A stretch of 64,000 nucleotides of DNA from Rhodosorus marinus CCMP1338 (GCA_029953675.1 JAMWBK010000003.1:806001-870000), one strand, 5' to 3'; counted from the stretch's first letter, positions 27,086 through 51,593 are shown. Numbers and translations: made by a program. Notes: a model not told the origin generated them from the sequence alone.

Positions 27086-28233
27086 ATGGAGAAGAAGGCA
27101 CCGGTGAGCCCATCGCGGACTAAGAATTGGATTTATGTTAACGGATTGTGTTTTGTTTGTAATATCTGATGTATTGGATTCTGCGATTTCCTTTTGTTAG
27201 GTGTTTGATATTGACGATGATGAAGAGCTTTCGCATGGAGAGCACATGTTGGCAGGCGCCATGGCTGGAGTATTGGAGCATGCCATAATGCATCCAGTGG
27301 ATACCGTGAAGACTCGCATGCAGGTGTATTCGGGTCTGTTGAAGAGTGAGAACCAGAGCGCGTTTCGTGCAGCAAGATCGATCGTGGAGAAAGAAGGAGT
27401 GGTGAGGCTATGGCGAGGACTGCCTGCAGTTCTGGTCAGCGCAGGGCCCGCACATGCGGTACACTTTGCTGCTTTTGAGCAGTTTAAACAGGAATTGAGG
27501 AAGGTTATGGGTCATCAAAATCCGCTCGCTACGGGAGCAGCTGGGGGGTTGGCAACGATGATTTCTGAGGGAATTATGGTACCGTTGGACGTCGTTAAGC
27601 AGCGACAACAAATATCTTCCAAGAAGCACGCAAGAACGATATCTGAGAGTGTAAGATATATTTACAGAGAGCATGGACTCGGGGCGTTTTATGCTGGCTA
27701 TCGGACATCACTCTTGATGGCAATCCCGTTCACGACTGTACAGTATTCTGTGTACGAGTTTGCCAAGGGTGTCATCCTGAGACGGAAAGGAATAGGGGAA
27801 CAAGATTTTTCGGCTGGGAGTCATTGCTTAGCAGGAGCTGTTGCCGGAGGAACGGCGTCAGCGGTAACAACTCCTCTGGATGTTGTTAAGACGCGATTAC
27901 AAACCCAAGGTGAAGTAGGTGCTAGGAGATATAGGGATTTACGTCACGCCATGAAGACGATCTACTTAGAGGAGGGTATTCGGGGGCTCTTCCGAGGTGT
28001 ACAGCCACGCGTTTTATTTTTCACGGTACGCCTATCTCCCGTTTAGACCGTCTTCCCCTTCGCTTTCGATAATAAGTCGGCTAGGCTGCTCACCAACGTC
28101 CTTTATTTTTCTTTACGATGGATAGCCGGCGGCCGCGATCTGCTGGACGACGTATGAGCTCTCGAAACATACGCTTGGACTCTACAGCGAAGTGGTGCAC
28201 ACGGAAGATACTATATCTGCGCCCCACACCTGA
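27086..28233 (+). CDS. Mitochondrial carrier, mitoferrin (MRS3/4)-type, 2 introns
   Basis: Three PxD(T/V)VKxRxQ signatures; AGAMAGVLEH, GPAHAVHF, RVLFFT|PAAAICWTTYE. Confidence 0.9.
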
Positions 28234-28673: not shown

Positions 28674-29519
28674 TCATTGCGATTTTGCCTTGTCCCCTTC
28701 GGAGCCAGGGATCGAGTCAGAGTCGCTATGCTCAGCGGCAGCGCTTTGGCTAGGTTCAGTTGAAACGGGCTGGGCTATGCGGAACTTATCAGATTCACTC
28801 CTGTGAACGAGTACGAGGCGTGGAAATTCGATCACAGTTCTACCTTGCACGGATTCTGCGAGAGTTGAATTTACATCCAGAGGCCAGAACGTGCTCCCTT
28901 TCTCGCGCTCAGCCTCCATGAACACCAGCAGAGCTTCCTCCTGCCGAGTTACGTCAGTTGCGGGTTTCTTGTTCATGGCAGCCGCCCGTTCCAGTGCAAG
29001 TTCGATGACGTCGGCGATTGTGCTCGTCTCAGGAACTCTGTCGAGAACGACAAACTCCGCCTGCGAGCCAGTTTGGACTGCAACCACCCGCTCACTTATG
29101 GTCACTTCCAGGCGCCAGAAGATGGTCCCCTTTTCTTTCACGACCGATGTGTTCCTTGCTGAGCGGCTGAAACCGTGAGGCAAGAACAATAGATGGACAC
29201 CGTTGGTGTGCGCCTGCCTCTTGAGCTTCGCTCGAAGTTGTTTAGATCTCCTACTCGGTTTCCCGAAAGCTCCGGACGACTTTTCCTCCCTCGCGCTAGA
29301 GTCAACACCACGGTTAAGCTCTTCAAGCAGGTTGTAGTCACTCATCAGGTCGGTCTCGTCATATTCAGAGCGGTTGATAAACGCCGTCCGGTCCCTCTCC
29401 CCGGAACATCCGCTGTCATCCTTGTGCCTTCTCACACAGACCGCACTGCAAGTGCGAAGGGAACACCTCGGACACCTGTACAACGAAGTTTTCTTCCGAC
29501 ACACTTCACATTCTGGCAT
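28674..29519 (-). CDS. BCD1: Box C/D snoRNP assembly zf-HIT protein (BCD1/ZNHIT6)
   Basis: CEVC..YRCPRCSLRTCSAVCVRRHK..CSGERDRTAFI..SDYNLLEE. Confidence 0.85.
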   Translation of the reverse strand: MPECEVCRKKTSLYRCPRCSLRTCSAVCVRRHKDDSGCSGERDRTAFINRSEYDETDLMSDYNLLEELNRGVDSSAREEKSSGAFGKPSRRSKQLRAKLKRQAHTNGVHLLFLPHGFSRSARNTSVVKEKGTIFWRLEVTISERVVAVQTGSQAEFVVLDRVPETSTIADVIELALERAAAMNKKPATDVTRQEEALLVFMEAEREKGSTFWPLDVNSTLAESVQGRTVIEFPRLVLVHRSESDKFRIAQPVSTEPSQSAAAEHSDSDSIPGSEGDKAKSQ

Positions 29520-30148: not shown

Positions 30149-33100
30149 AAGGGAAAAGGAAAGGTTTACATGGTTTGATTGTACTGAGCATTGATTATGA
30201 TGCTGGGTAAACAACCATGCTTTGTTTCCACGAATACTCTTCCCGCAGACTCCTTGCCTTCATGGTCGTGGAGCTGTGGCGAAATCGTGTGGCTTTGCGG
30301 CAGTAGTTTTTCGCGCCCATCGGATGAACGCCTGCTTGAGCTCCGGCATGGGGAGGGGGGGACGCCTCAGTACCCAATAAATTCGTTTCCTTCCGGAAGT
30401 ATCCCTTCCCCTGCTTCCTCAGGCAGCAAATTGAGTCTATAGAGTCAAGCTCTATATAATTGAACGCCGAAACAAAACCGCGCCGTTCCTCAATTGTATA
30501 ATCACTACGGATATTCAATATCCAGCAAGCAATCATTAACCAAATGAATTACTAAATAATTAGATACGATCAACCCGTGCAAGCATAAATTATTACAATA
30601 ATTAAGATACGAAGATATATTATCAATGAAAATAAATAAGCATGTAGCTGGATAATCAAGCAGGGATTGGGTGATGACAATCCAATCACAGGGAGAAAAT
30701 GACAACCTCGTTACTTTAGTGCATTGCTATCGTAGTTTTCATTTGCAACAATGCAAATCAGTGGTTTCCGACTTATACCTCAAAATCCTAAATTTTGAAA
30801 TAAATTTAATATGAATCGTTAAAGCATCCATAAATAATTCTAAATCAATATTCAAGTTCGGAGTATGGTCAAATGACAAACAAAAAACAAAGTTGGGAAA
30901 CGCAGAAGATAGTCTGTTGTTTTTTTTGTTTTGTTTTTCCAACTTTTCTCTCGGCAAAAAGTAGGAAGGGGGGCGAAAACCCTTTGCAAAAAAAAAAAAA
31001 GTGTTCCCATTTTTTCGCCAAATAGATGGAAAGAACTTTTTTTGAGGAAATTTCTTCTATATTTGATTACTTCAAGAAAATTGCGGAAAACAAAACAATC
31101 AATACGTTTCTACTGATAATTTTAACTTCTTTTTTGAGTGGTTATTAATATACCACAATTTAATCTTTCACTATTTTTTAGAGGCCCCCGTCCCAACCCG
31201 GCTTTTTCTCATTTCCCCCCAGCACTTCGGACTCGCGCGGAAAAAAAGGGGGAAAATCTAGGAAAATCCCCAACCCCCCCTTTTTTGCTTGGGACAATAG
31301 AATTCGCTCTCTCTGGCGTTCAGGGACAAATTTAAGAAGTCTTCGTTTTCGATGTTGTATCAAATATACTGTATATTTTATCGTTTTGTTGTTATGCTCG
31401 ATGGCCTTGGGTGTTTTTTTTTTTCAATTCTCAGGTTTGGAGATACACATCCGGTCCTCGTCGGTGAATGCTCTGTGGAGCTATGATAGAGGCGAAGACA
31501 GCTGCACTCACCATGCACACCGCGGCTATGGCGCTGCTTGTAGGTAGACAGGGATCGTCCAGAAATTTCGAAAGTGGATCTACGCTTCAGATTTTTCGCA
31601 ACCCTACTTCGCAAAGTTCCTAGCGATTGCAAGATCTTGCGTAGACAGATTTACAGAGGCTCCATTTAGCTAACTACGAGTGATGTGCATCCGACCAGTT
31701 AGACCAGTAACCATTTAAGCGTTGTTGGCGCCCACCTAGGTGCTCTAGAGATCTGCTGGATTCCACTTCGATAATAGTAGCAGGCTCTACCTCCCCAAAA
31801 ACGAAAGACAGGATTTGCACATCTCCTCGTCCATCAAGGGGAACCAACTCGAGACTAAGGTGGTTGGAGATATCTAGGATCTGCCAAAAGCAGTCCTGAC
31901 GTGGATAGAGAACCAGCTCTTACCGCTTCCATCGCTCGCCGGAGGTGCCGCGACTGCACATGACGACGTGGAGCAGCATGCAAGAGCCTAAACACCCTTT
32001 GAGCAACTGGTTATTATACGTTATACTGTACAATCACCTACCCCAAAACGCGTAGAATGCTAGAGTTAGACCCCCAGAGTTCATTAATATATTAGATCAT
32101 GGAACTAACATGATCTAATTCAAAAGCAGTCGATAATCACCAACCCCCCCAGGAACAGATTAGCCAGACTTCCAGATTCTTTACCCTCCCTATCCAACAA
32201 CCCCAAAACCTCCAAAGTACAAAAAAATATACCGAAATACATTGAAATATTGTGTTAATCAAGTTCGGACGTCTTCAAAGGGTATTGGATTTCCATCTCC
32301 GTTCAATTTGTTTTTGAAATTGCCCCCCCCCTACATTGCGGCAATAGGCAGATTTCCTTTAGCTTTCCGAGTTTAGTCATTCTTTTTTTGGCGGGGGATG
32401 ATTTTCCTTCGCAAGTACTTAATTCTAGCCATCAATACTCATTTTTATTTCAATATTTCTATATATCAATCGTTTTTTATACTTCTTGTTCCCTAGAACC
32501 CAAACCTCGAACCCCAAATCCAATGATCTCTAATTTTTTGTTGTTTTTTTCCGTGTCAAGTTTAAGTCTCTAGATGTCACCATTGTAAGAGAGGGGGGGA
32601 CTGAGAGATGAGAAATAAATTGCTTTTCAAGATCCATTTTATTTATTAAACGAAAATTGGGATTCAATGAGATTTGATGCAGAGAGAGGGGGATTTTTCA
32701 AAGTAAGGCATCACGAGGAGAAGAGGGAAGCCCCGGGGGGGTTTGTGGAAAAGGGGGAAGATGAAAATGATCCACATGAGGAACTCATTTTATTTAACAT
32801 TTGCTGGAAAAAATACCGAGTGGAAAAAGAGCGATGAATGGATTTTTTTTTTGGGGGGGAAATTCTGTGAGGATTGGGGACAGAAGTTGCAAGTGCTCTT
32901 GGGGGCGTTTGGTTTTTTTTTTTTGTGGAGAGGTTATGGGTTTAGTGTGGTTTGGCAGAGGGGGTGTGGTGGGGGGTGAGGGGTGGGGGAAGGGAGTTTC
33001 AGGTTTAGGGGATGGAGTAGAGAGAGCGGGGAGGAGGGTGTGAGAGAGGGGGTTGGATTGAGGTCTGCTGGTGGTAGAGTAGGAGGGACTTGGTGGATTC

Positions 33101-33267
33101 GTTTTTGGCGGGGGGAAGAGGTTGGCTTTCGGGGGAGGTTCGGGGAGGTGGGGGGTTTGGATTTGAGAGTCTAGGTTTGGTTTCTTTTTGGCGAGGTTGC
33201 CAAGGGTACTAGAGTCGCGTGATTTTCTGTTTATGGATACTTTACAGAAGTGGTTCTGAATGGAGGG

Positions 33268-36200
33268 ATGAGCGCTCGGGGGGGAACTCTGAGAGATCGG
33301 TTCAAGTCCCTCTGGGGAAAGAAGGACGAAGGGGATGAGGAGGAGGAAGGGGACGAGGAGACAGAGCAAGCGCAGGATTCTTCCGGAAAACAGTCCACCT
33401 CCAATCTTGCTTCAGGGTCAGCACAGGCGAGTGAATCGAAGCCGACTCAGAAAAAGTTAACACCGAAATCTAGTCCGACTGCTGCGGTTAAGCAGCCTGA
33501 GGCTCCTCCACCGAAAGCTATTTCCGTGTCGCCTAGGGACTCTATGGAAAATCAAAGCCAAAACTTGCAGGCACCGTCTATGCCTCCGAGGTCGATGTCT
33601 GCCCTACAACCTACTGCTAAATCCGTTACTAATCAACAGAGGCAGCTCGCAAAACCCGGAGCGCCGGCGGTTACAAAACCAGTGGCGACCAAGCCTACAT
33701 CGAAGCCTACATCGAAGCCTACATCGAAGCCTACATCGAAGCCTACAGCGAAGCCTTTACCAGTGCCAGCGGTGAAACCAGCTACAGCAGTCGGGAAAAC
33801 CTCTCCAGCGACACCCAAATTAGCACCACCGTCCAAACCCGCTTCTGCGCCTGCGGCCAAGACTAGTCCTGCTACTGCGGTCAAACCTGTTCCTGCTACT
33901 GCGGCCAAGCCTGTTCCTGCTACTGCGACCAAGCCTGTTCCTGCTACTGCGGCCAAGCCTGTTCCTGCTACTGCGGCCAAGCCTGTTCCTGCTGCTGCGG
34001 CCAAGCCTGTTCCTGCACCGGCAGCCAAGCCTGTTCCTGCACCGGCAGCCAAGCCTGTTTCTACTCCAGCGACTACTCCTGCTGCACGAGCGGCCAAGCC
34101 TGCATCGGCGCAAGCGATCAAGACAACAGCATCGACGGCCACCAAATCTTCAGTGCCACAGGCGAAAAGTTGTTCGGCGGGGTTGGGTAAATCAACCGGG
34201 TCTCCTGCACCTGCTCCAACAGTTTCATCCGCACGGAAGCTCTCAGTTCCTCACGAGAGGCCTGTGGGGAGAGCATCGGAGCGGCAGATAACAGCGCGGG
34301 AAATGAAAAGCTCGACAAAGGCTGTCTCGAAACCGACCAATGAGCAAACCAAAACACGGGCACCAACGCAAGCGAAGCTCAGCAGCAATACCGAGGCCAG
34401 GAAAGCTGCAGAAGCTCCCAGGGTCCATTGGAATCGTCCTTTCGAGGACAGGGGAGATGCTGACCTGAGCAGTAAGATAGGAGGAGCGAACTTGTCACCC
34501 GTGACTGTGTACAAGAGCAACGGATTTACCCCGCAACAGTTGAGGACTGGTCCGCTAACCTCCATCACTAACATTGATGATACAGCTCTTGCGTTGCGAG
34601 GCGGAGGAGCTGCGGCTACCTATTCTGCGTTCGAGGACGACGACGAGAATGATGAAGAGCTTCTACTGGAAGAGTGGGAGAGGACTGAGTTGGGCCTAGG
34701 GGAGGACATAGTTGACAACCCGGAGGCAGACTTTCCTGAAAGAAATGGATTTGTTCGTGTTTGGGTGAAGGATGATGAAGTTGGATGGGTTAAGGGCTAT
34801 GCGAGTGCAGACGGAACGGTTTTCGATCTATTTGGAAACGAGCGATCAAGGAACACTCACGATGATTCCCACAGAGTTAGCAACGATGACTTCCTGGATC
34901 ATATGGACGCGGTGGAGTTGCAAAATTTACATGAGTCTACAGTGCTGCATCTTGTCCACGAGCGCTTCAAAAAGTTCAAGATTTATACTTCTGTTGGTAA
35001 CGATGTACTGTTGATAGCAGTGAACCCCTGCATGTCTATTCCGGGAGCGTACACAAAGAAGCGGATGCGCAGGACACACACAGCCGGTAACAGCATGACA
35101 GCGCACGTACCACACGTGTTCTCCACGGCTGACGCTGCGTTTAGAGGGATGATGCAGGAAAAACGCCCCCAGAGTATAATTATCTCCGGGGACAGTGGAG
35201 CCGGAAAAACGGAGTCCGCAAAGCTCATTCTACGCTATTTAGCGTATGAGAATCACCTGTCGAAGAGAATCGCCACTGGGAAGAAGGTGCTTTCCACTAC
35301 GATAGAGGACCGAGTTTTGGAGACGAACCCGATTCTCGAGGCCTTTGGCAACGCGAAAACGCACCTCAATCATAACTCGTCTAGATTCGGCAAGTTGTTG
35401 CAGGTTATGTACAGCGATCGCGGCATGATTACCGGTGCCAGAATTCGTCAGTTCCTGCTTGAGAAGAGTAGAGTCACCGGGGCAATTGAGGGCCAGCGAA
35501 ACTTCCACATCTTCTATCAATTGCTACGCGGGGCTTCACCAGGTGAAAGAGAAAAGTACCACCTATTGCCGATGGAAGCGTACCGCTACCTGTCCCGAAC
35601 CGAGTGCTACGACGCGGATGGCATAGACGACCGGGAGGAGTTCTCGACTACAAAGCAAGCCTTTACACGTCTCGGATTCTCAACCGAGGAGATTGAATCT
35701 GTTCTGAGACTTGTTTCCGGAGTCTTGAGGGTTGGTAACTTAGAGTTTGACGCTAATGACAATGACGAGGCAAAAATTAAGAACATGGCAGATCTCGAGT
35801 GCCTGGCGAAGTTGTTCAAAGTGGACACGAAGGACTTGGAAATTGGAATGACGAAGAGAAAGATCTTTGCGGCCGGAGAGGAAATTGAAACATCCTACTC
35901 TCTGAGAGAAGCAGAAACTATGCGCGAAGGTTTGGCAAAAGCCACCTACAAGCATTTGTTCGCATACCTCGTTTCACGGTTGAATGAACAGCTGATGACT
36001 GGTGGAGACTACAAGAAGGGTGACTCTCGTCATGGCCTGTTTGTTTGTCTGCTTGATCAGGCTGGATTTGAAATATTTGAGAACAACAGCTTGGAGCAAT
36101 TGCTTATCAACTTTTCTAACGAGAAAATGCAGGGTCAATTCCATGAGCGAATTTCGTCCGTAGAGAGAATGGCCTACATAGAAGAAGATATCGACTGGAA

Positions 36201-39200
36201 AGAAGGTCTCGATTACGACCCCAAGCAGAACATTGTCCGAGTAGAGGCCCTAGAATCCTCCCCAAACGGAGTTTTGTCGATGATCAACGAGGAGGGAAGG
36301 CTTCTTGGGGGCAGCGAGGACGGCCTTTTGGAAAAGCTAAATACGTTTCCCTTCCGCGAATCTTCGGATGTTCCTATGGTTGAAACTTCCATGATAAGCG
36401 ATAACAGCTTCGTGTTCCACCATTTTGCTGGTAGAGTGAAGTACAATATGGAGGGAATGATCGAGAAGAACAAGGACTTTCTGCACAGAGACCTCGAAGA
36501 AGTGCTCGCGGAGTCTCTATGTCCTATTCTCTCATCCGCGTTTTTGGGGAAGAACCCGTCAGCGAAGAAATCGGGGAGGCGGGGCCAGAGCGAGCTCATG
36601 TCCGCAAGAACTGTGTGGGTAGAGTTCAAGCCGCAGATCAACGAACTTGTGGAAGTCCTGAAGCGGACAACTCCTCGTTACGTACGCTGTTTGAAGCCAA
36701 ACGATGCTCTGGAGCCAAGGTTGTTTGAGGCAGCGAGAATTTTGCAGCAGTTGCAGTATTCCGGAGTCCTGGAGTTCATTGACGTACGCAGAAACGGCCT
36801 ACCGGTTCGTATGCGGTACTCCACGTTCAAAGAACACTTCGCGGTTATCACGGCAAGGGAGCTGAAAAGTCAGCTTCCACGAGATACCTGTGCTGGTGTT
36901 TTAACAGCGGAGGCAGAGTTCGCCAGCGAGTACTACACCTCGGCTGGCCACGGCAGCGACATTTCGGTTAAGTGGGCACTCGGGAAGACAAAGGTGTTCA
37001 TAGCCGACGGTTTGCACAAATGGCTGGAAGACAAGCGTCTGCGAGTAATTCATGACACCATGGTTTTCTGTTTGAGCAAGATTCGTGCGCGAAAAATCAG
37101 AATTGAATACTTGGAAACCAGAAGAAAGATCATCAATTATGAGGTCGCTGCGAAGAGGTTCCTGGCAATGAATCATTTGCGACGAAGTGTGGCTGCTTGC
37201 CAGATCCTTCAGAGAAGCGTTCTTGCGCATGTTGGGAGAAGGTGGTTTGCAGATGTATCAAAATCGTCTCGAGTGCTTGTGTCAGCCTGGAGGAAACATC
37301 AAGCTCGAGAGGAATATGTATTCAATGAACTCTCACAGATGCTTATCAGCATGAAACTGAGAGAGCGAAAGTCGAAATTGACAGCACGTAGGTATCGCGC
37401 AGCGAGGACTCTTCAATCTCTGCAGCGGAAGAGGGTGGTTAGACGGAGAATGGTTGCGTACCAGAAGCTGAGAGCCTTCTTAATTTACGGCGGGGTGGTT
37501 AGGAGACTGACCAACTCGATGCGGGCGTGGAAGGAGAAATATCTAGAGCGGCGAGAACGAGGAGCGATGACTATCCAGCAGGCTGTTCGGAAGAGTAGAG
37601 CCGGCCAGGAGCTTTACCACGCTCGAAAATTCATTCCAGTGCTCTCTCTGTTCAAGACTGTTCTCGCGAGGAAGAGCTATGCTCACGAATGGCGGAGCTG
37701 CGTAATTATCAGTGCCATGTACAAACGAAACGCTTCTCAACGCTCGATTAAGCAGTCAGCGAAAGCTGCGACGGTCTTGACTAGATACAGCAGATCTTTG
37801 ACAGTGAAGAAACAGTCGTCTGCCACCAGTGATGGTGTTCAGAAACTCCAGCGTTCTATTCGAAGCTTCCAGGCCAGAAGAGCGTTGAATACGAAGGCTT
37901 GTTGGACCATTCAACGGGCCTACCGTGGAATAATTGCGAAAAGATCCTTCTCGAGCGAGGTTGGTAGTGTGGGAGTTATATCTCAAGCAGCCCGAGTCCT
38001 ATCCGCCAAAGCACTTAGGGAGATCCTGGTTCGTGTGTCACCGTCGCGGTTTAATTCCGATGAGCACGCGGAAAGTATACACGCGGTTGTGTTCGGGCCA
38101 CCTGCAAGTGGAAAGAGCTCGTTGGTTAACACATTGTTGTGTAGGAGAGCACGTACAGTTGAGTCTCTCGATTTTGATGATCCACTGGATGAGTTGGAAG
38201 GAGAAGACGACTTCGACATCGACGATGATGAGGAGGGCGTGATTGCCACGGTTGGCATACCAGGTGGCAAGTTCCAGTTGAGTGACACGGAGGCAATCAG
38301 CGATTTTACTAGTGCCGCTATGGTCAAGGAGGAACTTGGCGAAAGAGGGTACGACTCGATCTTTATTTTTGTTGATAAGATTAATTCTCCGCGAACCCCA
38401 AGAGAAGCCCTGCGGGCCCTTGCCAAGGCCTTCGGGAAAGGAGTCTGGGAAAGAACCTTGTTCGTTTTCACCAATTGTGATGTTAACGTACCTGGGCTCA
38501 GCTTTGCGAAACTTTTTCAGCGGAAGACAACCCTCTTGAACAAGACGCTCCATGCCTTGAGTAACAGCTCGGTTATGCCAGAATGCTTCGCGATAGACAA
38601 CAGAACGGCTCGATACAAAGCGGAGTGGATTGAATCGCTGCATTCTCTCTATGGCTCCATCGAAGAGTCAAGTCAGAGGCTAAGAAACGAGCGTACGGAG
38701 AGTGCCCTTGTTCTTCAGACAATCTACAGGCAGTTCGCCAGTCATGTGGTCTTCAGAACCACGAAGAAGTCTTTTGAAGATAAACGCGAACAGAGCGTGT
38801 CGCAGGTGTTGTGTACTGCTTGGAGAGTACTCAACGCAGCGCAGATGAAGCAGAATTTGATTTCCAAGGGCGAGAGGCTGCAGTGCTTTTCGCGCATGAT
38901 TATTGGGAAGAAACATGCTGTTCACACCAGCGAGAAGATCGCGAAATTGCTGAACTTCCTACGGGGCGTGTCCGCACGGAGCGGTTTTCTCAAATTGGCC
39001 AATTCTGTGGTCGCGTTGACCACTATGATGAGAAGTCTCGACCCTAGACGTGATTTGCTCGTGACATATAAGCAAGCTACGATAGTTCAAGCCGCATATC
39101 GAAGATCGTCTTCTACGATGCACAGCAAGGTGCTTCGCCTGGCAGCTCCGAACAGATTCGAGACTGGACCCGACAGGCAGTTCATTATTTGCGGGCCTGC

Positions 39201-42200
39201 AGGAGTAGGGAAATCGTCACTGACACATTTGATCCTAGGCGACAACTACGGGTCAGAGGCAAATGAGTTTCTGGATGATGCCGGAGACATAGGGATGGAC
39301 GTGTCGATATTTACCAAAGGTAAACTATCTATGTATGATACTCAAGCACTTGGCGATGTGTCAACCCCCGACTCTCTAAGGAAGGCGCTTGCGTACCCGG
39401 AAAAGCATGCGTCGTCTGTTTTTCTATTCGTTGATCGCTTTGGGTCTCACAGATTGCCGCGAGGCAGTTTGAGAACCTTAAGTCAGGCGCTGGGACCCAG
39501 AATCTGGCGCCAAGCGATCATCGTTTTGACCATCGACGATGAGAAAGATGGAGTGGGCGCCGCTGACAGTGAAGCGCTAATGAAACGGAAGGAACGAGCT
39601 TTTAATGCAGCCATCACATCGATCATGGCGGAGCTTGCAGACGGTGATTCCCTTTGTCATGTTCCCGTTCTCGCGGTTGACTGCAAAGATGGACGGAAGT
39701 CTACCTCGGCAATGGAACGGGTGACGAATCTCATGGATGCTTTGGAATCTGTCTCCGATAATCGAATCCGTAGAGTTCAAAGCGCTCAAGAGGTGGTTTC
39801 CAGGTTGCAGAGGTCGAAAACCGATAGGTATATGCTGTACGAAAAGTTGAAAGCACAGGCGCTTCTATCCGGCATTGCCCGGAGCATGACAGCCAAAGCT
39901 TCGAAGAAGCTGGAACTCGCGAGGACTGAAGCCGCCGCGACTACTCTTCGCGGAGCAGCTCGTCGCGTGCACTACTTGTGCGGGAGGGACTCTGTGAAGA
40001 TGGTCGGGTCGTTGACCAGACGCTCAGCCGCGAAGAGCTGCTACACTCGACAACGCAGATCTGTTCGCACCATCGCCATCGCGCAGAGAATTTTCATGGC
40101 AAGGCGAGAGCGAGATGTGTTCTTACGTGCGTCACCTATGAGATTCAAGGCGACTAGGAAAGCTCGACCGGTTGGGGCGGTCGTATATGGACCTGAAGGA
40201 GTTGGAAAAAGTTCTTTCATAAATCTGGTGCTGGACAAGAACAAGATGCAGGTCCGAGATACGCTTCTCGCAAGTTTGAAGATGGAAAACGAAGGACAGA
40301 ATTCTCCCGTTTTATTTGCCGACGTGGATCCCAACACAGCGTTTCGGATGTATGAAACTTTTCCAGTGGTGGATAGTATTTCCGCCGCTGCGGTTGCAAA
40401 TTCTTTGCGAGACCCGTTGGAGCATCCTCTGACAAGCTTTGTGCTGGTAGATCGGTTCGACAACCACAGGGTGCCGAGGGACGTGATTGCTGCCGCAACA
40501 ACTGCGTTCGGTTGGAGCGTGTGGAAGAGATCGATTATTGTTCTATCCCATGGAGATCTGCTGGAGACTTACAAGAACAAGATCAACGAGGATGTGGACA
40601 TCCTGGACCTAAAGTCAAAGGCCTACAACTCGTGCATCAATGAAGTACTGGAGGAAACAGAGGATGAAGCATCGTCAAAGTTCACCGCAGAGGTACCTGT
40701 AGTGATCGTCGATAACACAGCCACGCGTGAGAACTATGACGTGCTCGAAAGTGTTGCGCACTTCTTGGATCTGCTGAAACTGCATGCCGGGAGCCGAAAC
40801 TATCTGTTCTCATTCCAAGGGCTGCACTCGCAACCAACTACAGCGTTCCAAGCCTCGCCGTCCAAGGGTAGACAAGGAGCTTTTAGGGCTGCAAGGTCTA
40901 TGGAACCTGAAGCTCCTCTTGGGGTTGGGAAAGAGAAGACTCCTGATTCTGAACCTCATAGGACTAGTCCAATGAAAGAAGTGCCGAAAGCCCGGACTGC
41001 GAATTCCAATAGCAGGCTTCGAATTCCACGGTCGAGGAAACGCCGTTCTTACTACGAGACTCTGAACTTGCCGGAGGACGCGAGCGAGGCTCAAATTCGA
41101 TCGGCATATAAGGAAATGGCTAGAATGTTCCATCCCGTAAGTTCTCGCTTTTGATCTATTTTTTGGCTGCAGGTCACAGCATGTTTTCATCCTTTTTGTG
41201 GCCAACTAAGCTGGAGAGAAACTGCGAGACCCGCCTCTCACATGCTTTTCCGCCTGCGGACTGCTGACAGGACCGTAACCGAGACGACATAGAAGCTGCA
41301 GCGACGATGTTCAGAGAAGTGACGGAAGCTTATGAGAGGCTGATAGGAGCGAAAAGTGCAGGCCCTCTTGGTGACGGCGACGCACTTGCTCATCATACTG
41401 AAGGGGAAGTTTACACATCCACGAGAGGTTTTCCTGTGTACATAAAGACTATTCACAGGCGATATTGGACAGCAAGAGAGGGTGAAGAGGTACGAACACT
41501 TCTTGGACACGAGGTGTTTGTCCTCCGAAAAGCTCATATTTTCTTACTCTATCTTGTCGTTCAGCTGAGGGCTTTTTGCAAGGAACGAGATCTTAGCCCG
41601 CTAGAGAGGTTCGAGATTCGGTGGGTGAACCAGGGAGGATTCGTTATCAGGGCCCATGATGAGAGGGTTGTCGTGCTCGCAAGAGAAGGGGATAGGCTGA
41701 TACTCGTACCGCAGGACGAGGCTTTCAGCGACCCGGGCGATGACAAGGTACCTCGGTACATGTTCAAACTACTATTCTTGGAAGACGGCAAGTTCGTTAT
41801 TTCTGCGGCAAACCATAGGTATGCACTCATGTCCAAGCAACGGTTATAGAATGATCACTGACACTATGTGGCGACTCACCTCTGACAGATTTTTGTGTGG
41901 CGAGAGAGGAGGTCGTTTGAGAGCAAATCGAGATTCAGCGAAGGCATGGGAAATGTTCAGCTGGCGTCTTGCACCGAGTGAAAGCGGAGAGGAGTTCTCA
42001 TGGGATCCTTTGGTGGTTAACCTTTCAGCGCATACGAAGAATTTCATCGACGTGAATCCGCACGAGGCGGCAGTCACTTGCAAGTCATCGCATCCGGCAA
42101 CAGCTGAAAGGTAGGTGTTCATGTGCTCAACACGCCAGGGTATGCACTTGCAACGGAACTTGGAGACTAAAGAAGGTTTCTCTCGGTTCTGTAGGTTCGT

Positions 42201-42642
42201 TCTCGAAGCCGTCTATGGACAAATGTTCAGGCTGCGGGGAAGCGATGGGCGTCTGCTGTGTGTGGCATTTGATGGTACACTGGTTATGGCTGATGAGGAA
42301 TCAGAGGACTTTTTGCGTGCGGTGCGCAAGAGTGAATTCTTTGCCGATTTCTTAGACTTTGGTCGGGTCGTACTATCAATTGTGGACGTACATAACAGAT
42401 TGTACGTATCGGTCGAGAACGAAGCTTTGGAGTTGAGAAACAGATGGCGGAAGAATGCCGAGTTGAGACTGCGGGTCTGCTTTGAGGACACGCAGATGAT
42501 GCGCCAAATTGAGTTCTTTTCAGATGATCATCTGCCTTGGGTTGATCAGATGGAAAATGAGGAGGAGGTAAAGGCCAAGCCCAGCATACCGCCTCAAGCG
42601 GAGGTGATGCCGACCAAATTCAGTAGGTATCGGCAGTTCTAG
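33268..42642 (+). CDS. Unconventional myosin (about 3,003 aa): repeat N-terminus, motor, IQ-like repeats, 3 Toc34/AIG1-like GTPase domains, J-domain, fascin-like repeats
   Basis: Motor motifs GDSGAGKTES, NSSRFGK, LDQAGFE, YVRCLKPN, GKTKVF; P-loops GPPASGKSS, GPAGVGKSS, GPEGVGKSS; YYETL..FHP|D; exons 33268-41136, 41271-41489, 41565-41818, 41889-42110, 42195-42642 join in frame (9,012 nt). Confidence 0.9.
33691..34071 (+). repeat. Coding tandem repeats: 12-bp (KPTS) x5 and 24-bp (xKPVPAxA) x8
   Basis: aagcctacatcg units 33691-33750; gccaagcctgttcctgctactgcg-like units 33880-34071. Confidence 0.95.
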
Positions 42643-46811: not shown

Positions 46812-48917
46812 TCACAGGACTCTTTCAAGTCTTGACTGGACTGTCCTGAGCCTGCTCTCAACTGAAGTTGTACAAAGCAGGGGGTAGACAGCATCGTCGT
46901 TCCCCCGAGCGAGAATGTGTGCCAGAGATGCCATCCAGAAAGATAGTTCGTCGTCTTCCGGAGGCAGCTCCCCGATTTCCTCAATGATGCTTCCGAGGAT
47001 CGTACTCCTCCCGAGAGCCGAATTGGAAACCAAAGACCTGCAGGTCTACAGGTTCGCGTGACGGATTTAAAAAAACCGATCCCTTAGCCAAGCGAAGAGA
47101 CATAACGTGTTTCCATTCTGTGCGGGCAAGATACCGATGCACTTCGCTCGATAGACGATCGAATAGCTTCATCTGCAGTAGCCGAGTCCTCATCCTCAAA
47201 GTACTCAATTTTCGCGAGATTGTATCCGTCCCTATTAGATCGCTCCTTAATACGGAACCTAGTCAGTGTCGTAGAGAATGAAACGAAAGATCTGAGCTTT
47301 CCAGGCTCCGTGCAGACGTATGGCCTGAAAGCCACAAGCGCTTCTAGGTGTTTGCGGTGGGCGATTGAATCCAAGAGTATACAAACCTTCGAAGTCCAAC
47401 AGTTTCAACAAACGATCGACCATCCGGAAGCACCTCCTGCTTGCGGATATACAACATAGTTCCCACATCAGAGTACGGCTCTCCCACCGATGAACACATT
47501 CCTGAACCGCGTGTTGAAATGAGCGAACCAAAAGAGTAAAACCCAAACTGTCAAAGCGCTGGTCGCTGGACTACCAGCTTCAGGCCAAAGCTGGTAGTCC
47601 AGCGTCGCGATGGTACAGGTGAGTTTGGAAGGGTCGAGTATCTTACCAAACATTCGAAATCTGCTCTCTAGGCAGCGTCTCATCATCTGATACAAACAGT
47701 CAATGACAAAACGCGGTTTCCATGGGCCGCTACTGCTCAGCTTTGCTGATTCTTGTTGTTTCTGGATAGTTTGACGGGGGGCTTACCAGTCTGTATCGGG
47801 GCTCGAATATGTGAAGGTTGCAGCGAAGTCCCGGCCATGCTATCATGCACACGAAAATGGGAACGAAGCCGTCCTCGGACATGAATTCGTCCATCTCCTT
47901 CTTGGCGTTTGCCTGCCATTCCTCGTACTCTCGAGGTGCCAGCTCCCGAAGCACTTTCTCCAAAATTCTGTTCGTTTTTAGGTTTTTGGGGTTCGCGTGG
48001 ACCCAAGCTGCAAAGTCGTCTAGGGGTTCGCGAGTCAATGGGCATACGGGCGCCGCGGCACATCCGGAGGTTGGGTTGGTTACCTCGAGGGCTCTGGTGA
48101 TACACTCCCTGCAGACGGTGTGGCCGGTGGGGTATGTACAAGGCTCGAAAAACAGTTCGGAGCAGCAAAAACACTCGAAAATGTCCAGTTTGTCCATAGA
48201 AGAGAGGGACTGATCTTCGGGAATGTCATTTACTTCCGATTTGATCCCGCTCAGAATCTCGTGGCTGAAGAGCGGATGGACATCGCTTCCATCCGTCAGC
48301 TGAGTGAGCACCTTCGCTGTCCGCTTGTTCAACGAACCCACCAACGCGACGCTAATGAGGATATCGTGAAGGGCCTGTGCCGAGTTCTCATTCGCCAGCT
48401 CACGTTTCGCCTTGTACATCCATATCTCAGCCAATACAGATCTCTTCTTCACGGTCTCCTTCTCTGGATCCACTGCCGCGCCCTCAGCCAAGCTCTTCAA
48501 AACCTCAAGCTCCGTTTCATAATAATTCCGCACAAGCTCTCTCACAACCACATCCACATACTTGGCTCGTTTCCAGTCCACTCTAGTGAACAAAAAACCC
48601 CACCCTTCCTCCGATCTAACCTCATCATAACACCCTCGACAAGCCGTATAACCTTTACAAGTCGTTACAGGTTCAACCAACAATCCACAACATACAACAC
48701 AATCAAATAGTCTCACATTCTCCTCCTCATCCTTCCCCTCCCCCTTCCCATTCAGCAACACCTTCAACTCCTCCTTCAACCCATCCATCCTCGTCTCCTC
48801 CTTATCCTCCTTCACCCCTTCCACCAATCCAGAGCTCCCCACTACATATACATCCCCACCACTGCTTGATCCTTTCAGCCAACTCCTTACCGTATTTATC
48901 ATCCGGTTCATATTCAT
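46812..48917 (-). CDS. LON N-terminal (PUA-like) domain and RING finger protein (LONRF-like), multi-exon
   Basis: Two RING-like segments, then PIFV..PG..LHIFEPRYRL|MMRRCL, DGRS..EAL..FRI, GYNLAKIEYFED. Confidence 0.85.
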
Positions 48918-48971: not shown

Positions 48972-49006
<35 letters not shown>

Positions 49007-49095
49007 ATCTCTCTCTCTATCTTTCCCTCTTGCTATCTGTCTCTCTCTGTCTCTCTCTCCATCTCCTCTATCTCTTTGTGTCTATCTCCCTCGCA
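48972..49095. repeat. (CT)n microsatellite / pyrimidine tract
   Basis: Perfect (TC)n about 48972-49002 decaying into a CT/CTAT-rich tract, upstream of the LONRF start. Confidence 0.95.
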
Positions 49096-49139
49096 CTCTC
49101 CCCCCGTCGATGACGTTACGATGCGAGTTCATCGACCAC

Positions 49140-50411: not shown

Positions 50412-51593
50412 CTAGACCAGACAATGCTTTGAACTCCTGAGCTTTCGATCTCTGCGCTGGCTCTCCTCTATTATCTTCTTCTTCTCCTCCGCCCCTGCCA
50501 TGTCTCCTGCTGTCATTGCGATGACATCCCCCCTATGGCGTGAATCGGTTGGAAGCGGGTCGTGGCTGGGTTTGGAAAGAACAAGCTTCCCGTTCAAGGA
50601 ATCCTGAACATTCCAAATGCGCCGCCCGTTGTAGTCCAAACAGCTCAACCAGGATCCTTCGATGATTCCAGCTTCCTCTCCATTCTTCAGAATTTGACCT
50701 CGGAAATAATCACTCGGCAAGTTGCGATTCTTTCCGAACACGATCTCACATGAAAGGCCGTTCATTGCATCCTCCAACTCCATCGCCCCATAAATATCAT
50801 GCCTGTAGACTCCCATCATCACATTGTTGAACAGGTCACGAGGCATACGCACAGTAATAGAACTGCCATCATCAAACTCCACTGTTCGAAGACCTTTGTT
50901 GATAAGCCTCAATTCGTTCACCCCAAACTTTGCAGAGAAACACAAATCTCCGTGCATTTTGAATCCTTCGCCTCTCACCTACGATGGAGCGGGAACAGGA
51001 GCTACGTGATTAGCGCCAAGAATACAATTGTATGCTAGGAAAGGAGTCAAAACAAGCTGCCAAAACACCACGTGAGCACGCACCTGGAACGCTGTTATCG
51101 GTGGGTGATGGCTTGCTTGCTCGATGTACAGTTGGGAGGTTTCACCAACTACTGCCTGATACGTTTCCCCAATGGTAGGATTGAGGGGTTTCCTTGCTCC
51201 AGATGTCAAATGCAAGCCAGCAATATTAACAGCTGCCATTCTCGCTAGTCTTTCCACTGGGTCGCTCGACTTGCCAGCCGCTACTAGGAAATGGTCAGAA
51301 TAAGACAGCGTCTTGGCCAAGTTTTGCAGAACTGTTGTCGGCTCAGAACATTTCGCAGGAAACGTCACGTATAGAAGGTCCTTCCCCCTCAAAACGTTCA
51401 TACCAATCTGCTTAATAATATCAAAAGCCACCCTCCGCTGCGCCGACACAATCGCTTGGCTCTCAGTCATCCCTCCTCGCGCATGCGCCCCAGGATGCCT
51501 GGGGTCCTTATCCGCTACATCCTCCTCCTTCTTCGAGACCACCGCAACGGGCTCTCGACGAAATAACTTCGCAACAAAACTCTTCTCAGTCAT
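50412..51593 (-). CDS. Oxysterol-binding protein (short ORD-only, Osh4/Kes1-like), 1 intron
   Basis: RKPLNPTIGETY, EQASHHPPITAFQ|V (OSBP fingerprint EQxSHHPP), LPTDSRHRGD, KKKIIEESQRRDRKLR. Confidence 0.9.

What the first reader, a model, noticed from the sequence alone, without database searches (positions are those of the whole stretch)
33268..42642. Myosin fused to three Toc34/AIG1-like GTPase domains, a J-domain and fascin-like repeats
Seen: one spliced frame of about 3,003 aa joins a myosin motor (about 34880-37030), IQ-like helices, three P-loop domains (from about 38080, 39180, 40180), a J-domain (41050-41345) and beta-trefoil-like repeats. Established, from recalled consensus: Toc34-family plastid import receptors carry FGKGIWxKAIVALTH and IPVVLIEN. 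Here the domains read AFGKGVWERTLFVFTN, ALGPRIWRQAIIVLTI and AFGWSVWKRSIIVLSH..VPVVIVDN. Inference: a single-chain machine linking actin motility, organelle- or preprotein-binding GTPase modules, Hsp70 recruitment and actin cross-linking, for example for plastid positioning or precursor delivery to the TOC complex. I know of no described myosin class with this architecture, but cannot search to confirm.
Basis: partly seen in the sequence, partly recalled or inferred. Interest (0 to 1): 0.95.

Follow-up and report, generated by a model that had tools for sequence, protein, structure and literature searches.

The report
Red-algal myosin with Toc34-like GTPase tail
One 3,003-residue gene of the red alga Rhodosorus marinus really does join a myosin motor to three Toc34-like GTPase domains, a J-domain and two fascin-like beta-trefoils. 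It belongs to a red-alga-specific myosin family first noted in Galdieria in 2007, whose tail was never properly described and whose function is still unknown.

Summary
Five GT..AG exons (33268-42642, + strand) encode exactly 3,003 aa. Exon 1 alone is a 7.9-kb open frame running from the motor to the first half of the J-domain.

A 9.5-kb transcript contig from a close relative (88% identity) covers the motor through to the stop codon. A second, polyadenylated contig confirms all four introns.

Domains found:
- Myosin_head, E 7e-184.
- Three P-loop GTPase domains. Their nearest solved relatives, by sequence profile (E 5e-17) and by predicted fold, are Toc34/Toc33.
- A J-domain with HPD (58 bits).
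- Two beta-trefoils whose best fold match is fascin.

All tail domains are under purifying selection (dN/dS 0.02-0.26).

The window is Rhodosorus marinus (GCA_029953675.1). Orthologues with the same domain order exist in Compsopogon (two G domains) and Galdieria (one), and a fragment exists in Purpureofilum. The architecture is therefore not undescribed: Odronitz and Kollmar (2007) listed the Galdieria orphan myosin as "IQ + AAA + DnaJ". The Toc34-type identity of that "AAA" domain and the trefoils appear to be unreported.

The G domains form their own divergent clade. They are not Toc34 members, and in Rhodosorus they lack the DxxG glycine. The plastid/TOC function remains inference.

The parts
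33268..41136 (+). Exon 1 (aa 1-2623): N-terminal extension, motor, neck, G1, G2, G3 and the first half of the J-domain
   Evidence: It is part of the 2,634-codon ORF 33250-41154. The donor is CATCCC|gtaagt. It is 88% identical to transcript contig L003 over 2,604 aa.
41137..41270 (+). Intron 1 (134 nt, GT..AG); splits the HPD motif of the J-domain between P and D
   Evidence: It is spliced in L001. The homologous 134-nt intron is retained in L003.
41271..41489 (+). Exon 2: second half of the J-domain and the start of trefoil A
41490..41564 (+). Intron 2 (75 nt, in frame, GT..AG)
   Evidence: It is absent from both transcript contigs. L001 shows a 25-aa gap against the unspliced model, and L003 reads GAAGAG|CTGAGG.
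41565..41818 (+). Exon 3
41819..41888 (+). Intron 3 (70 nt, GT..AG)
41889..42110 (+). Exon 4
42111..42194 (+). Intron 4 (84 nt, GT..AG)
42195..42642 (+). Exon 5 with the stop codon TAG (42640-42642)
   Evidence: L001 and L003 have the same stop codon and a homologous 3' UTR, and L001 ends in a polyA run.
33268..34737 (+). N-terminal low-complexity extension (aa 1-490), rich in Pro, Ala, Lys and Thr. It holds 12-nt repeats (33691-33756, KPTS x5.5) and 24-nt repeats (33851-34059, AAKPVPAT x8.7)
   Evidence: This is the least constrained part of the protein, dN/dS 0.36.
34906..37002 (+). Myosin motor domain (aa 547-1245). P-loop GDSGAGKT at 641, switch I NHNSSRFGK at 701, switch II DQAGFE at 930
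   Evidence: Pfam Myosin_head E 7.1e-184, covering 3-678 of 679 profile positions. The motifs were located. dN/dS is 0.086. Identity is 42% to the Compsopogon orthologue and 38% to the Galdieria orthologue, and at most about 38% to any named myosin.
37003..38028 (+). Neck (aa 1246-1587): basic helical region (R 16%, K 8%, E 4%) with 3 strict IQ-like motifs
   Evidence: Pfam IQ was not detected here but is detected in the Galdieria phlegrea orthologue.
38029..38667 (+). GTPase domain G1 (aa 1588-1800): SPSRF lead-in, P-loop GPPASGKSS, DTEA, VDKINSPR, FGKGVWERTLFVFTNCD, FAIDN
   Evidence: Pfam AIG1 25.6 bits (cut-off 27). TIGR00991 (Toc34) is the top NCBIfam hit, E 7.6e-7. dN/dS is 0.11.
38668..39138 (+). 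Basic, IQ-like linker between G1 and G2
   Evidence: (internal repeat HSP). dN/dS is 0.33-0.66.
39139..39777 (+). GTPase domain G2 (aa 1958-2170): APNRF, GPAGVGKSS, DTQA, VDRFGSHR, LGPRIWRQAIIVLTIDD, LAVDC
   Evidence: TIGR00991 E 9e-5 and TIGR00993 (Toc86/159) E 2e-4. dN/dS is 0.19-0.26.
39778..40119 (+). Basic linker between G2 and G3
40120..40821 (+). GTPase domain G3 (aa 2285-2518): SPMRF, GPEGVGKSS, ETFP, VDRFDNHR, FGWSVWKRSIIVLSHGD, VPVVIVDN
   Evidence: TIGR00991 E 1.2e-9. The AF2 model has pLDDT 76 and pTM 0.80. Foldseek PDB ranks 1-13 are Toc34/Toc33, E 1e-9 to 5e-8. dN/dS is 0.08-0.11.
41047..41342 (+). J-domain (aa 2594-2647) with HPD, interrupted by intron 1
   Evidence: Pfam DnaJ 57.9 bits (cut-off 27.8) on the spliced protein. 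dN/dS is 0-0.06.
41427..41994 (+). Beta-trefoil A (aa 2676-2816), spanning introns 2 and 3
   Evidence: Pfam Fascin 25.6 bits and DUF7910 30 bits. The AF2 model is all-beta and confident. Fascin-1 is the top Foldseek match, E 1.7e-12. dN/dS is 0.02-0.055.
42007..42483 (+). Beta-trefoil B (aa 2821-2951), spanning intron 4
   Evidence: dN/dS is 0.04-0.055.
42484..42639 (+). C-terminal tail (aa 2952-3003), predicted with low confidence; ends ...PTKFSRYRQF, which is conserved in Purpureofilum

Best explanation
SHOWN. This is one real, expressed, selectively maintained gene of the red alga Rhodosorus marinus. It is the Rhodosorus member of a red-alga-specific myosin family (Galdieria, Compsopogon, Purpureofilum, Rhodosorus). 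The shared plan is: N-terminal extension, motor with intact ATPase motifs, long basic IQ-like neck, one to three AIG1/Toc-type GTPase domains each preceded by a basic helical linker, a J-domain with HPD, and two tandem fascin-like beta-trefoils. No transmembrane segment was found, and a crude scan found no heptad coiled coil.

INFERRED mechanism.
- The motor moves on actin.
- The G domains work as Toc34-type modules that pair across the nucleotide pocket. The arginine equivalent to Toc34 R133 / Toc33 R130 is invariant in all of them.
- That pairing would either join heavy chains, standing in for the missing coiled coil, or dock the tail on another G protein of the same type.
- The J-domain switches on a cytosolic Hsp70 at that site.
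- The highly constrained trefoil pair supplies a second binding surface for actin or for a cargo ligand.

I take the most likely cargo to be an organelle surface. The plastid envelope, through its TOC receptor GTPases, is the single most likely target because of the Toc34-type interface.

My confidence by layer: anatomy and family assignment about 0.95; G domains acting as pairing or docking modules plus Hsp70 recruitment about 0.4; plastid/TOC as the specific target about 0.2-0.25.
For: Gene and transcript. The ORF is continuous and the introns are canonical. Two independent transcript contigs from close relatives were found, one spanning motor to stop. The Compsopogon orthologue sits on a single 8.3-kb transcript contig.

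Selection. dN/dS is 0.086 for the motor, 0.08-0.26 for the G domains, at most 0.06 for the J-domain and 0.02-0.055 for the trefoils. Linkers are at 0.27-0.66.

Family. An exhaustive profile search of 1.84 billion representatives returned only four proteins with the characteristic tail domains (P0001, P0122, P0123, P0128). The three with a named source are red algal: P0122 and P0123 combine myosin, G domains and a J-domain, and P0128 is a J-domain plus trefoil fragment. P0001 is an unnamed transcript fragment 89-91% identical to the window. Motor identity is 38-46% within the group, against at most about 38% to any other myosin.

G-domain type. Pfam AIG1 scores 42 bits on the whole protein and 50.6 bits in Compsopogon. 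The PDB profile search gives Toc34 at 4.9e-17, Toc33 at 2e-14, Toc120/90 at 1.4e-7, GIMAP7 at 9e-5 and septins at 4e-4 or weaker. The fold search gives Toc34/Toc33 first and GIMAPs next. The VDRLDxxR motif is shared with true algal Toc34s, and its Arg is invariant in 13 of 13 aligned sequences.

Other domains. J-domain with HPD. Trefoils. No TM and no coiled coil by a crude scan.

Precedent for a cytoskeletal G protein docking on TOC GTPases by the G interface: Chlamydomonas septin SEP1 with TOC90/TOC120 (bioRxiv 10.64898/2026.03.28.715002).
Against: - There are no functional, localisation or binding data for any family member.
- All three Rhodosorus G domains have lost the glycine of the DTPG (DxxG) box, reading DTEA, DTQA and ETFP. 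Compsopogon-b (DTLG) and Galdieria (DTVG) keep it. GTP-dependent switching may therefore be impaired here.
- Against the Toc34 model the myosin G domains score lower (21-46 bits) than generic AIG1-like proteins (55-80 bits) and far lower than true algal Toc34 (286-296 bits). In a crude NJ tree they form a clade of their own. The Toc34 affinity is therefore a resemblance, not a nested position.
- Cyanidioschyzon, Porphyridium purpureum and Chondrus are reported to have no myosin at all yet import plastid proteins (PMC5583752, PMC3942036). The protein therefore cannot be a general requirement for import.
- Only two trefoils are present, against four in fascin. Lectins with tandem trefoils match almost as well.
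- IQ motifs are weak.
Confidence: 0.5

Rival explanations
1. General-purpose or cytokinetic myosin with no TOC link. As the only (Galdieria) or one of very few myosins of these algae, it does the generic actin work, such as contractile ring function or organelle inheritance. The G domains merely oligomerise the heavy chains in a septin-like way, in place of a coiled coil. The trefoil pair is a second, ATP-insensitive actin-binding site, so that the motor can slide or bundle filaments.
For: - Galdieria is reported to have a single myosin gene (PMC5583752).
- No coiled coil and no TM were found in a crude scan.
- AIG1/Toc GTPases are relatives of septins and share the arginine finger.
- The trefoils are the most constrained part (dN/dS 0.02-0.055), and fascin is their best fold match.
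Against: - It does not explain the J-domain.
- Two trefoils are not known to reproduce the actin-binding sites of fascin.
- The G domains resemble Toc34 much more than septins in sequence (4.9e-17 against 4e-4 or weaker).
Confidence: 0.3
2. The G domains are pseudo-GTPases. They keep the fold and perhaps bind nucleotide constitutively, but they no longer switch. They serve as rigid spacers or fixed interaction surfaces in the tail. This reading can co-exist with either functional reading above.
For: - The DxxG glycine is lost in all three Rhodosorus domains, and Asp is replaced by Glu in G3.
- Scores against the AIG1 and Toc34 models are low.
Against: - The P-loop GxxxxGKSS, the (T/S)xxD box and the arginine finger are kept in all copies.
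- Selection is purifying, dN/dS 0.08-0.26.
- The Galdieria domain and the Compsopogon-b domain keep DTxG.
Confidence: 0.25
3. Annotation artefact: neighbouring myosin, GTPase and DnaJ genes read through as one frame.
For: None beyond the unusual length and domain mix.
Against: - There is a 7.9-kb stop-free frame from before the motor to the J-domain.
- L003 covers motor to stop in one contig.
- The same domain order occurs in Compsopogon and Galdieria.
- Inter-domain linkers are also under purifying selection, dN/dS below 1.
Confidence: 0.02
4. AIG1/GIMAP-type stress or immunity GTPase function attached to a motor.
For: Pfam files the G domains under AIG1. GIMAPs are the second-best fold matches.
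Against: - Toc34/Toc33 beat the GIMAPs in both sequence and fold searches.
- The Toc-type VDRLDxxR motif is present.
- There is no sign of the rapid evolution typical of immune genes.
Confidence: 0.05

Closest known systems
Galdieria sulphuraria orphan myosin (Odronitz and Kollmar 2007, PMC2375034), represented here by the G. phlegrea protein P0123
   Same: - Same order: motor, IQ neck, P-loop NTPase domain, DnaJ.
- The G domain hits the Rhodosorus profile at E 1.8e-24.
- The motor is 38% identical.
- The C-terminal trefoil region aligns at 26% identity with shared invariant residues.
   Different: - One G domain, against three here.
- It has clear Pfam IQ motifs.
- It keeps the DTVG box.
- The published description calls the P-loop domain 'AAA' and does not mention Toc34/AIG1 similarity or the trefoils.
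Compsopogon caeruleus protein A0A6T6BUX0 (MMETSP0312; UniRef name 'Calmodulin')
   Same: It has Myosin_head, AIG1 (50.6 bits), a second G domain, DnaJ and a trefoil region on one 8.3-kb transcript contig. The motor is 42% identical.
   Different: It has two G domains. In a crude NJ tree, Cc_Ga groups with Rhodosorus G1/G2 and Cc_Gb with G3. It is not described in any paper found in the library.
Toc34/Toc33 chloroplast import receptor GTPases (PDB 1h65, 3bb1, 3bb3, 7vcf_G)
   Same: - Best solved match by sequence profile and by fold.
- Shared features: P-loop GxGGVGKSS, the VDRLDxYR arginine-finger motif, FGxxIWxxxIVxLTH and PVVxIEN-like strands.
   Different: - 16-18% identity.
- Scores are far below the TIGR00991 cut-off.
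- No C-terminal membrane anchor.
- The DTPG glycine is lost in Rhodosorus.
- The domains are internal to a motor protein.
- They form a separate clade in a crude tree.
AIG1/GIMAP (IAN) GTPases
   Same: Same Pfam family, PF04548. They are the second-best fold matches.
   Different: The sequence profile match is much weaker (GIMAP7 at 9e-5). They have no VDRLD motif.
Fascin
   Same: The Pfam Fascin hit is above its cut-off. The leaf motif DGK.x.SaaN.rYL...G.L.A.r..a..WE.F.W is shared. Fascin-1 is the best Foldseek match across both trefoils.
   Different: - Two trefoils, against four.
- 15-17% identity.
- TM-score about 0.37.
- Tandem-trefoil lectins also match.
- Actin binding is untested.
Plant class VIII myosins (closest named motors)
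   Same: About 35-36% identity across the motor.
   Different: The tails are unrelated. The red-algal motors are closer to each other (38-46%) than to any named class.
Chlamydomonas septin SEP1 on the chloroplast envelope (bioRxiv 10.64898/2026.03.28.715002)
   Same: It works like the proposed mechanism: a cytoskeletal protein with a septin/Toc-type G domain binds TOC159-family G domains through the G interface.
   Different: It is a septin filament former, not a motor, and has no J-domain. The interaction was shown experimentally there and is only hypothesised here.

Membership tests
Myosin superfamily | Motor domain matching Pfam Myosin_head above the gathering score, nearly full length | tested here: met
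   613 bits against a cut-off of 33.3, covering profile positions 3-678 of 679.
Myosin superfamily | Intact P-loop, switch I and switch II | tested here: met
   GDSGAGKT at 641, NHNSSRFGK at 701 and DQAGFE at 930.
Myosin superfamily | Actin-activated ATPase and motility | not testable with these tools
   Needs biochemistry.
Red-algal (Galdieria-type) orphan myosin | Domain order: motor, IQ-type neck, P-loop NTPase domain(s), DnaJ | tested here: met
   compared with the description in PMC2375034.
Red-algal (Galdieria-type) orphan myosin | Homology to the Galdieria and Compsopogon proteins in motor, G domain and C-terminus | tested here: met
   G-domain profile hits at E 1.8e-24 (Galdieria) and 2.9e-84 (Compsopogon). 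Motors are 38% and 42% identical. C-termini are 26% and 33% identical. No maximum-likelihood tree was made.
AIG1/Toc ('paraseptin') GTPases, Pfam PF04548 | Score at or above the Pfam gathering score | tested here: inconclusive
   The whole protein scores 42 bits against a cut-off of 27. Single domains score 25.6, 14.7 and 18.3 bits. Compsopogon Ga scores 50.6 bits.
AIG1/Toc ('paraseptin') GTPases, Pfam PF04548 | G-domain fold of the Toc34/GIMAP type | tested here: met
   AF2 model of G3 has pTM 0.80. Foldseek gives Toc34/Toc33 and then GIMAP1/2/5/7, all at probability 1.00. Only G3 was modelled.
AIG1/Toc ('paraseptin') GTPases, Pfam PF04548 | G1 P-loop GxxxxGK[ST] | tested here: met
   GPPASGKSS, GPAGVGKSS and GPEGVGKSS.
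AIG1/Toc ('paraseptin') GTPases, Pfam PF04548 | G3 box DxxG (DTPG) | tested here: not met
   The window has DTEA, DTQA and ETFP. The box is kept as DTLG in Compsopogon-b and DTVG in Galdieria.
Toc34/Toc33 receptors proper | Score at or above the TIGR00991 cut-off (421 bits). True algal Toc34s used as yardsticks score 286-296 bits | tested here: not met
   21.6-37.7 bits for the window's domains.
Toc34/Toc33 receptors proper | C-terminal transmembrane anchor in the plastid outer envelope | tested here: not met
   No hydrophobic segment was found; the maximum 19-residue Kyte-Doolittle mean is 1.26. The G domains are internal.
Toc34/Toc33 receptors proper | Arginine finger of the dimer interface (psToc34 R133 / atToc33 R130) in the VDRLDxYR motif | tested here: met
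   The Arg is invariant in all 13 aligned sequences. The motifs read VDKINSPR, VDRFGSHR and VDRFDNHR.
Toc34/Toc33 receptors proper | Binding of transit peptides and TOC partners | not testable with these tools
   Needs experiments.
J-domain proteins (Hsp40 co-chaperones) | DnaJ domain above the Pfam cut-off, with the HPD tripeptide | tested here: met
   57.9 bits against a cut-off of 27.8. The motif reads FHPDRN, with HP|D split by intron 1.
Fascin | Pfam Fascin domain above the cut-off | tested here: met
   25.6 bits against 23.1, which is marginal and covers one leaf only. The profile hits fascin at 1e-6.
Fascin | Four tandem beta-trefoils forming the actin-bundling sites | tested here: not met
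   The AF2 model shows two trefoils, aa 2676-2816 and 2821-2951.

The most novel reading that the evidence does not exclude
The tail is a soluble, motor-borne counterpart of the TOC receptors. Its Toc34-type G domains would heterodimerise with Toc34 on the red-algal plastid envelope in a nucleotide-dependent way, while the J-domain loads Hsp70. One polypeptide would then physically couple actin-based force to the plastid import and division apparatus, for plastid positioning or inheritance, or for delivery of chaperoned precursors. This would be the first direct link between a motor and a translocon.
Probability: 0.15. Interest if true: 0.9.

Novelty: new member of a known kind. Interest (0 to 1): 0.55.

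Why it matters
Red algae have a very reduced set of cytoskeletal motors. Several species are reported to have no myosin at all, and Galdieria is reported to have one. This family may therefore be the main or only actin motor in the lineages that keep it, yet nothing is known about what it does.

Its tail combines three modules never studied together on a motor: Toc34-type dimerising GTPases, an Hsp70-recruiting J-domain and fascin-like trefoils. All are conserved across at least three red-algal classes and are under selection as strong as on the motor.

Recognising the old 'AAA' domain as a Toc34-type G domain gives concrete, testable hypotheses:
- GTP-gated dimerisation of a myosin.
- Docking on TOC GTPases.

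It also adds a new, cytosolic branch to the septin/Toc/AIG1 GTPase group, which bears on how the TOC receptors arose.

Tried and rejected
1. The protein search with the whole tail found only one relative, because the word filter limits reach.
2. The third protein search, with the six-domain G profile, was swamped by Der/EngA P-loop matches. It did not even return the known orthologues and gave no usable names.
3. Naming the best single-domain hits through cluster look-up gave almost no organism names, so no labelled phylogeny could be built. Only a crude NJ tree without support values was made.
4. A scan of metagenome contigs with the trefoil profile found no relatives.
5. Rfam and tRNA scans of the window found nothing.
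7. L003 never appeared in the script folder. I re-entered it from the printed sequence.
8. The fusion-artefact reading was rejected (see the rival explanations).
9. I considered whether P0002 (46% motor identity) is a truncated orthologue. Its contig shows no G domain downstream. Instead it shows an IQ-like stretch and a TM-like segment in another frame, so it is a different myosin.
10. Coiled coil and TM were checked only with crude home-made scans. No proper predictor was available.

Full report
WHAT IS THERE

The region holds one long gene on the + strand. An uninterrupted ORF of 2,634 codons runs from 33250 to 41154. Reading on from its end, four short GT..AG introns (41137-41270, 41490-41564, 41819-41888, 42111-42194) join five exons. 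Intron 1 cuts the J-domain between the P and the D of its HPD motif. Pfam therefore sees only half a J-domain on the raw ORF (28.6 bits) and a full one on the spliced protein (57.9 bits).

TRANSCRIPT EVIDENCE

The tail query found one relative in the 5.8-billion protein set. This was P0001, encoded on a 3,683-nt polyadenylated contig of a JGI sample (L001). It is 89-91% identical, lacks all four introns, including the in-frame 75-nt one, and ends at the same stop codon.

A member of the same 90% cluster lies on a 9,522-nt contig of another sample (L003). That contig begins at residue 4 and runs through the N-terminal extension, motor, neck, three G domains, J-domain and trefoils into the 3' UTR. 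It is 88% identical over the 2,604 aa of exon 1. The homologous intron 1 is retained and introns 2-4 are removed.

Motor and tail are therefore on one RNA in a close relative. Both contigs are de novo assemblies, so long-read cDNA would still be the clean proof.

ORGANISM

A neighbouring single-exon gene (BCD1/zf-HIT, 28674-29519, - strand) is found by exact look-up on NCBI assembly GCA_029953675.1, contig JAMWBK010000003.1. [quoted passage not shown] The rest of the window carries ordinary nuclear genes: SSRP1, a mitochondrial carrier, a U-box protein, an oxysterol-binding protein and a trehalose-phosphate synthase.

DOMAINS

Motor. Pfam Myosin_head scores E 7e-184 over nearly the full profile. 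The P-loop, switch I and switch II are intact. The closest named myosins (plant class VIII and others) are only about 35-38% identical.

Neck. It is 340 aa long and very basic. It has only 3 strict IQ-type matches and no Pfam IQ hit. Similar basic helical stretches separate G1, G2 and G3. BLAST shows that the unit 'basic helices + G domain' is an internal repeat.

G domains. Each starts with an (S/A)PxRF lead-in and has an intact P-loop. The three are 26-28% identical to one another.
- Pfam AIG1 passes its cut-off on the whole protein (42 bits) but not on single domains (25.6, 14.7 and 18.3 bits).
- For each of the three, and for the three G domains of the Compsopogon and Galdieria orthologues, the best NCBIfam family is TIGR00991 (Toc34). 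TIGR00993 (Toc86/159) usually comes second.
- A profile of these six domains hits pea Toc34 at E 4.9e-17 over the whole G domain. It hits Chlamydomonas Toc34 at 3.5e-15, Arabidopsis Toc33 at 2e-14 and Toc120/90 at 1.4e-7. GIMAP7 scores 9e-5 and septins 4e-4 or weaker.
- An AlphaFold2 model of G3 (pLDDT 76, pTM 0.80) has Toc34/Toc33 chains as its 13 best PDB matches. GIMAPs come next.

C-terminus. The last 350 aa fold, in the model, into two all-beta domains (pLDDT mostly 80-92). Their best matches are fascin-1 (E 1.7e-12), followed by tandem-trefoil lectins. The sequence profile also finds fascin and a trefoil carbohydrate-binding module through one leaf motif.

HOW FAR 'Toc34-LIKE' GOES

It is not diagnostic of Toc34.

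What the myosin domains share specifically with true algal Toc34s is the VDRLDx(Y/H)R motif. The true Toc34s used here are P0154 and P0160, which score 296 and 286 bits on TIGR00991. The Arg of that motif is the dimer-interface 'arginine finger' (Toc33 R130; named as such). It is invariant in all 13 aligned sequences.

Against a closer relationship:
- The myosin domains score lower on the Toc34 model (21-46 bits) than generic AIG1-like proteins do (55-80 bits).
- They form their own clade in a crude NJ tree.
- They have no membrane anchor.
- In Rhodosorus all three have lost the glycine of the DTPG box (DTEA, DTQA, ETFP). Compsopogon-b and Galdieria keep DTLG and DTVG.

I therefore describe them as a divergent, myosin-borne branch of the AIG1/Toc GTPases, with Toc34 as the nearest characterised relative. 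They are not Toc34 family members.

FAMILY AND PRIOR KNOWLEDGE

An exhaustive profile search of 1.84 billion representatives gave, above the generic AIG1 background, only four proteins:
- P0001.
- P0122 (2,266 aa).
- P0123 (2,039 aa).
- The fragment P0128.

Pfam shows P0122 as Myosin_head + AIG1 (50.6 bits) + a second G domain + DnaJ. P0123 is Myosin_head + IQ + P-loop + DnaJ. P0128 is DnaJ + Fascin/DUF7910. Their sources are Compsopogon caeruleus, Galdieria phlegrea and Purpureofilum apyrenoidigerum, all red algae from three classes. The C-terminal trefoil region aligns in all of them, at 64%, 33% and 26% identity. The motors are 42% and 38% identical.

[quoted passage not shown] They report none in Cyanidioschyzon, Porphyridium purpureum or Chondrus.

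The family was noticed, as an orphan, but I found no paper in the library that identifies its P-loop domain as Toc34/AIG1-type or mentions the trefoils.

The crude tree suggests one ancestral G domain. It was duplicated before Compsopogon and Rhodosorus split (Cc_Gb with Rm_G3), and the upstream copy was duplicated again in the Rhodosorus line.

SELECTION

Codon alignments of the window with L003 and L001 give these dN/dS values:
- Motor: 0.086.
- G1: 0.11.
- G2: 0.19-0.26.
- G3: 0.08-0.11.
- J-domain: 0-0.06.
- Trefoils: 0.02-0.055.
- Linkers: 0.27-0.66.
- N-terminal extension: 0.36.

The tail domains are thus functional. The trefoils are the most constrained part of the whole protein.

MECHANISM (INFERENCE)

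The motor should be active. I found no coiled coil and no membrane anchor, though only by crude scans. Heavy-chain pairing or cargo attachment must therefore come from the tail domains.

Toc34-type GTPases pair across the nucleotide pocket using the conserved arginine (established knowledge of Toc33/34, restated). The simplest reading is that the G domains are nucleotide-dependent pairing modules. They could pair with each other, or with a resident G protein of the same type on a cargo.

The J-domain with HPD would activate an Hsp70 at that place. The trefoils offer a further binding surface, either actin, as in fascin, or a glycan or other ligand, as in lectins.

The plastid envelope with its TOC GTPases is the most attractive cargo. 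A 2026 preprint shows that a cytoskeletal G protein, septin SEP1, binds TOC159-family G domains in Chlamydomonas. Nothing here tests this, however, and several myosin-free red algae import plastid proteins normally.

The main rival is a general or cytokinetic role. In that reading the G domains only oligomerise the motor and the trefoils give a second actin site. A pseudo-GTPase reading is compatible with either.

VERDICT

This is a new (Rhodosorus) member of a known but barely characterised red-algal orphan myosin family, with a triplicated G domain. It is interesting mainly because the Toc34-type nature of the tail gives the family its first testable functional hypotheses.

Noticed in passing
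window 28674-29519 (-), 27201-28046 (+), 21043-21903 (-), 47730-48917 (-), 50979-51704 (-), 58553-59389 (+): The neighbouring genes are ordinary nuclear genes: BCD1/zf-HIT, a mitochondrial carrier, SSRP1 (FACT), a weak U-box protein, an oxysterol-binding protein fragment and a GT20 trehalose-phosphate synthase. The BCD1 protein gave the exact match that identified the assembly as GCA_029953675.1, Rhodosorus marinus.
   Followed up: partly
window 41136/41271: Intron 1 splits the catalytic HPD tripeptide of the J-domain (H-P | D). The homologous intron is retained in transcript contig L003 of the relative, where it would truncate the protein after the half J-domain. This could be an unspliced pre-mRNA or a regulated isoform lacking the J-domain and trefoils.
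   Followed up: no
window 33691-33756 and 33851-34059: These are coding tandem repeats, 12 nt x5.5 (KPTS) and 24 nt x8.7 (AAKPVPAT), in the Pro/Ala/Lys-rich N-terminal extension. Repeat number differs in the relative L003.
   Followed up: partly
L002 95-3370 and 3370-3947: The best motor match (P0002, 46% identity, from another JGI sample) is a different, short myosin of 1,091 aa. Beyond its stop, another frame reads an IQ-like stretch and a hydrophobic, TM-like segment (IILVGSAIAVTIIGTVI). This may be a frameshifted tail-anchored myosin. Its organism is unknown.
   Followed up: partly
P0122 (Compsopogon caeruleus, UniRef A0A6T6BUX0): The 2,266-aa orthologue is named 'Calmodulin' in UniRef. 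This is a misnomer for a myosin with AIG1 and DnaJ domains.
   Followed up: no
window 48972-49100: A TC dinucleotide run of about 65 copies lies just upstream (on the - strand) of the U-box ORF.
   Followed up: no
window 32388-33250: The stretch upstream of the start codon is G-rich on the + strand and gives long spurious ORFs on both strands (for example 32794-33369, -, Pro-rich). I treated these as non-coding promoter or 5' UTR sequence, not as genes.
   Followed up: no
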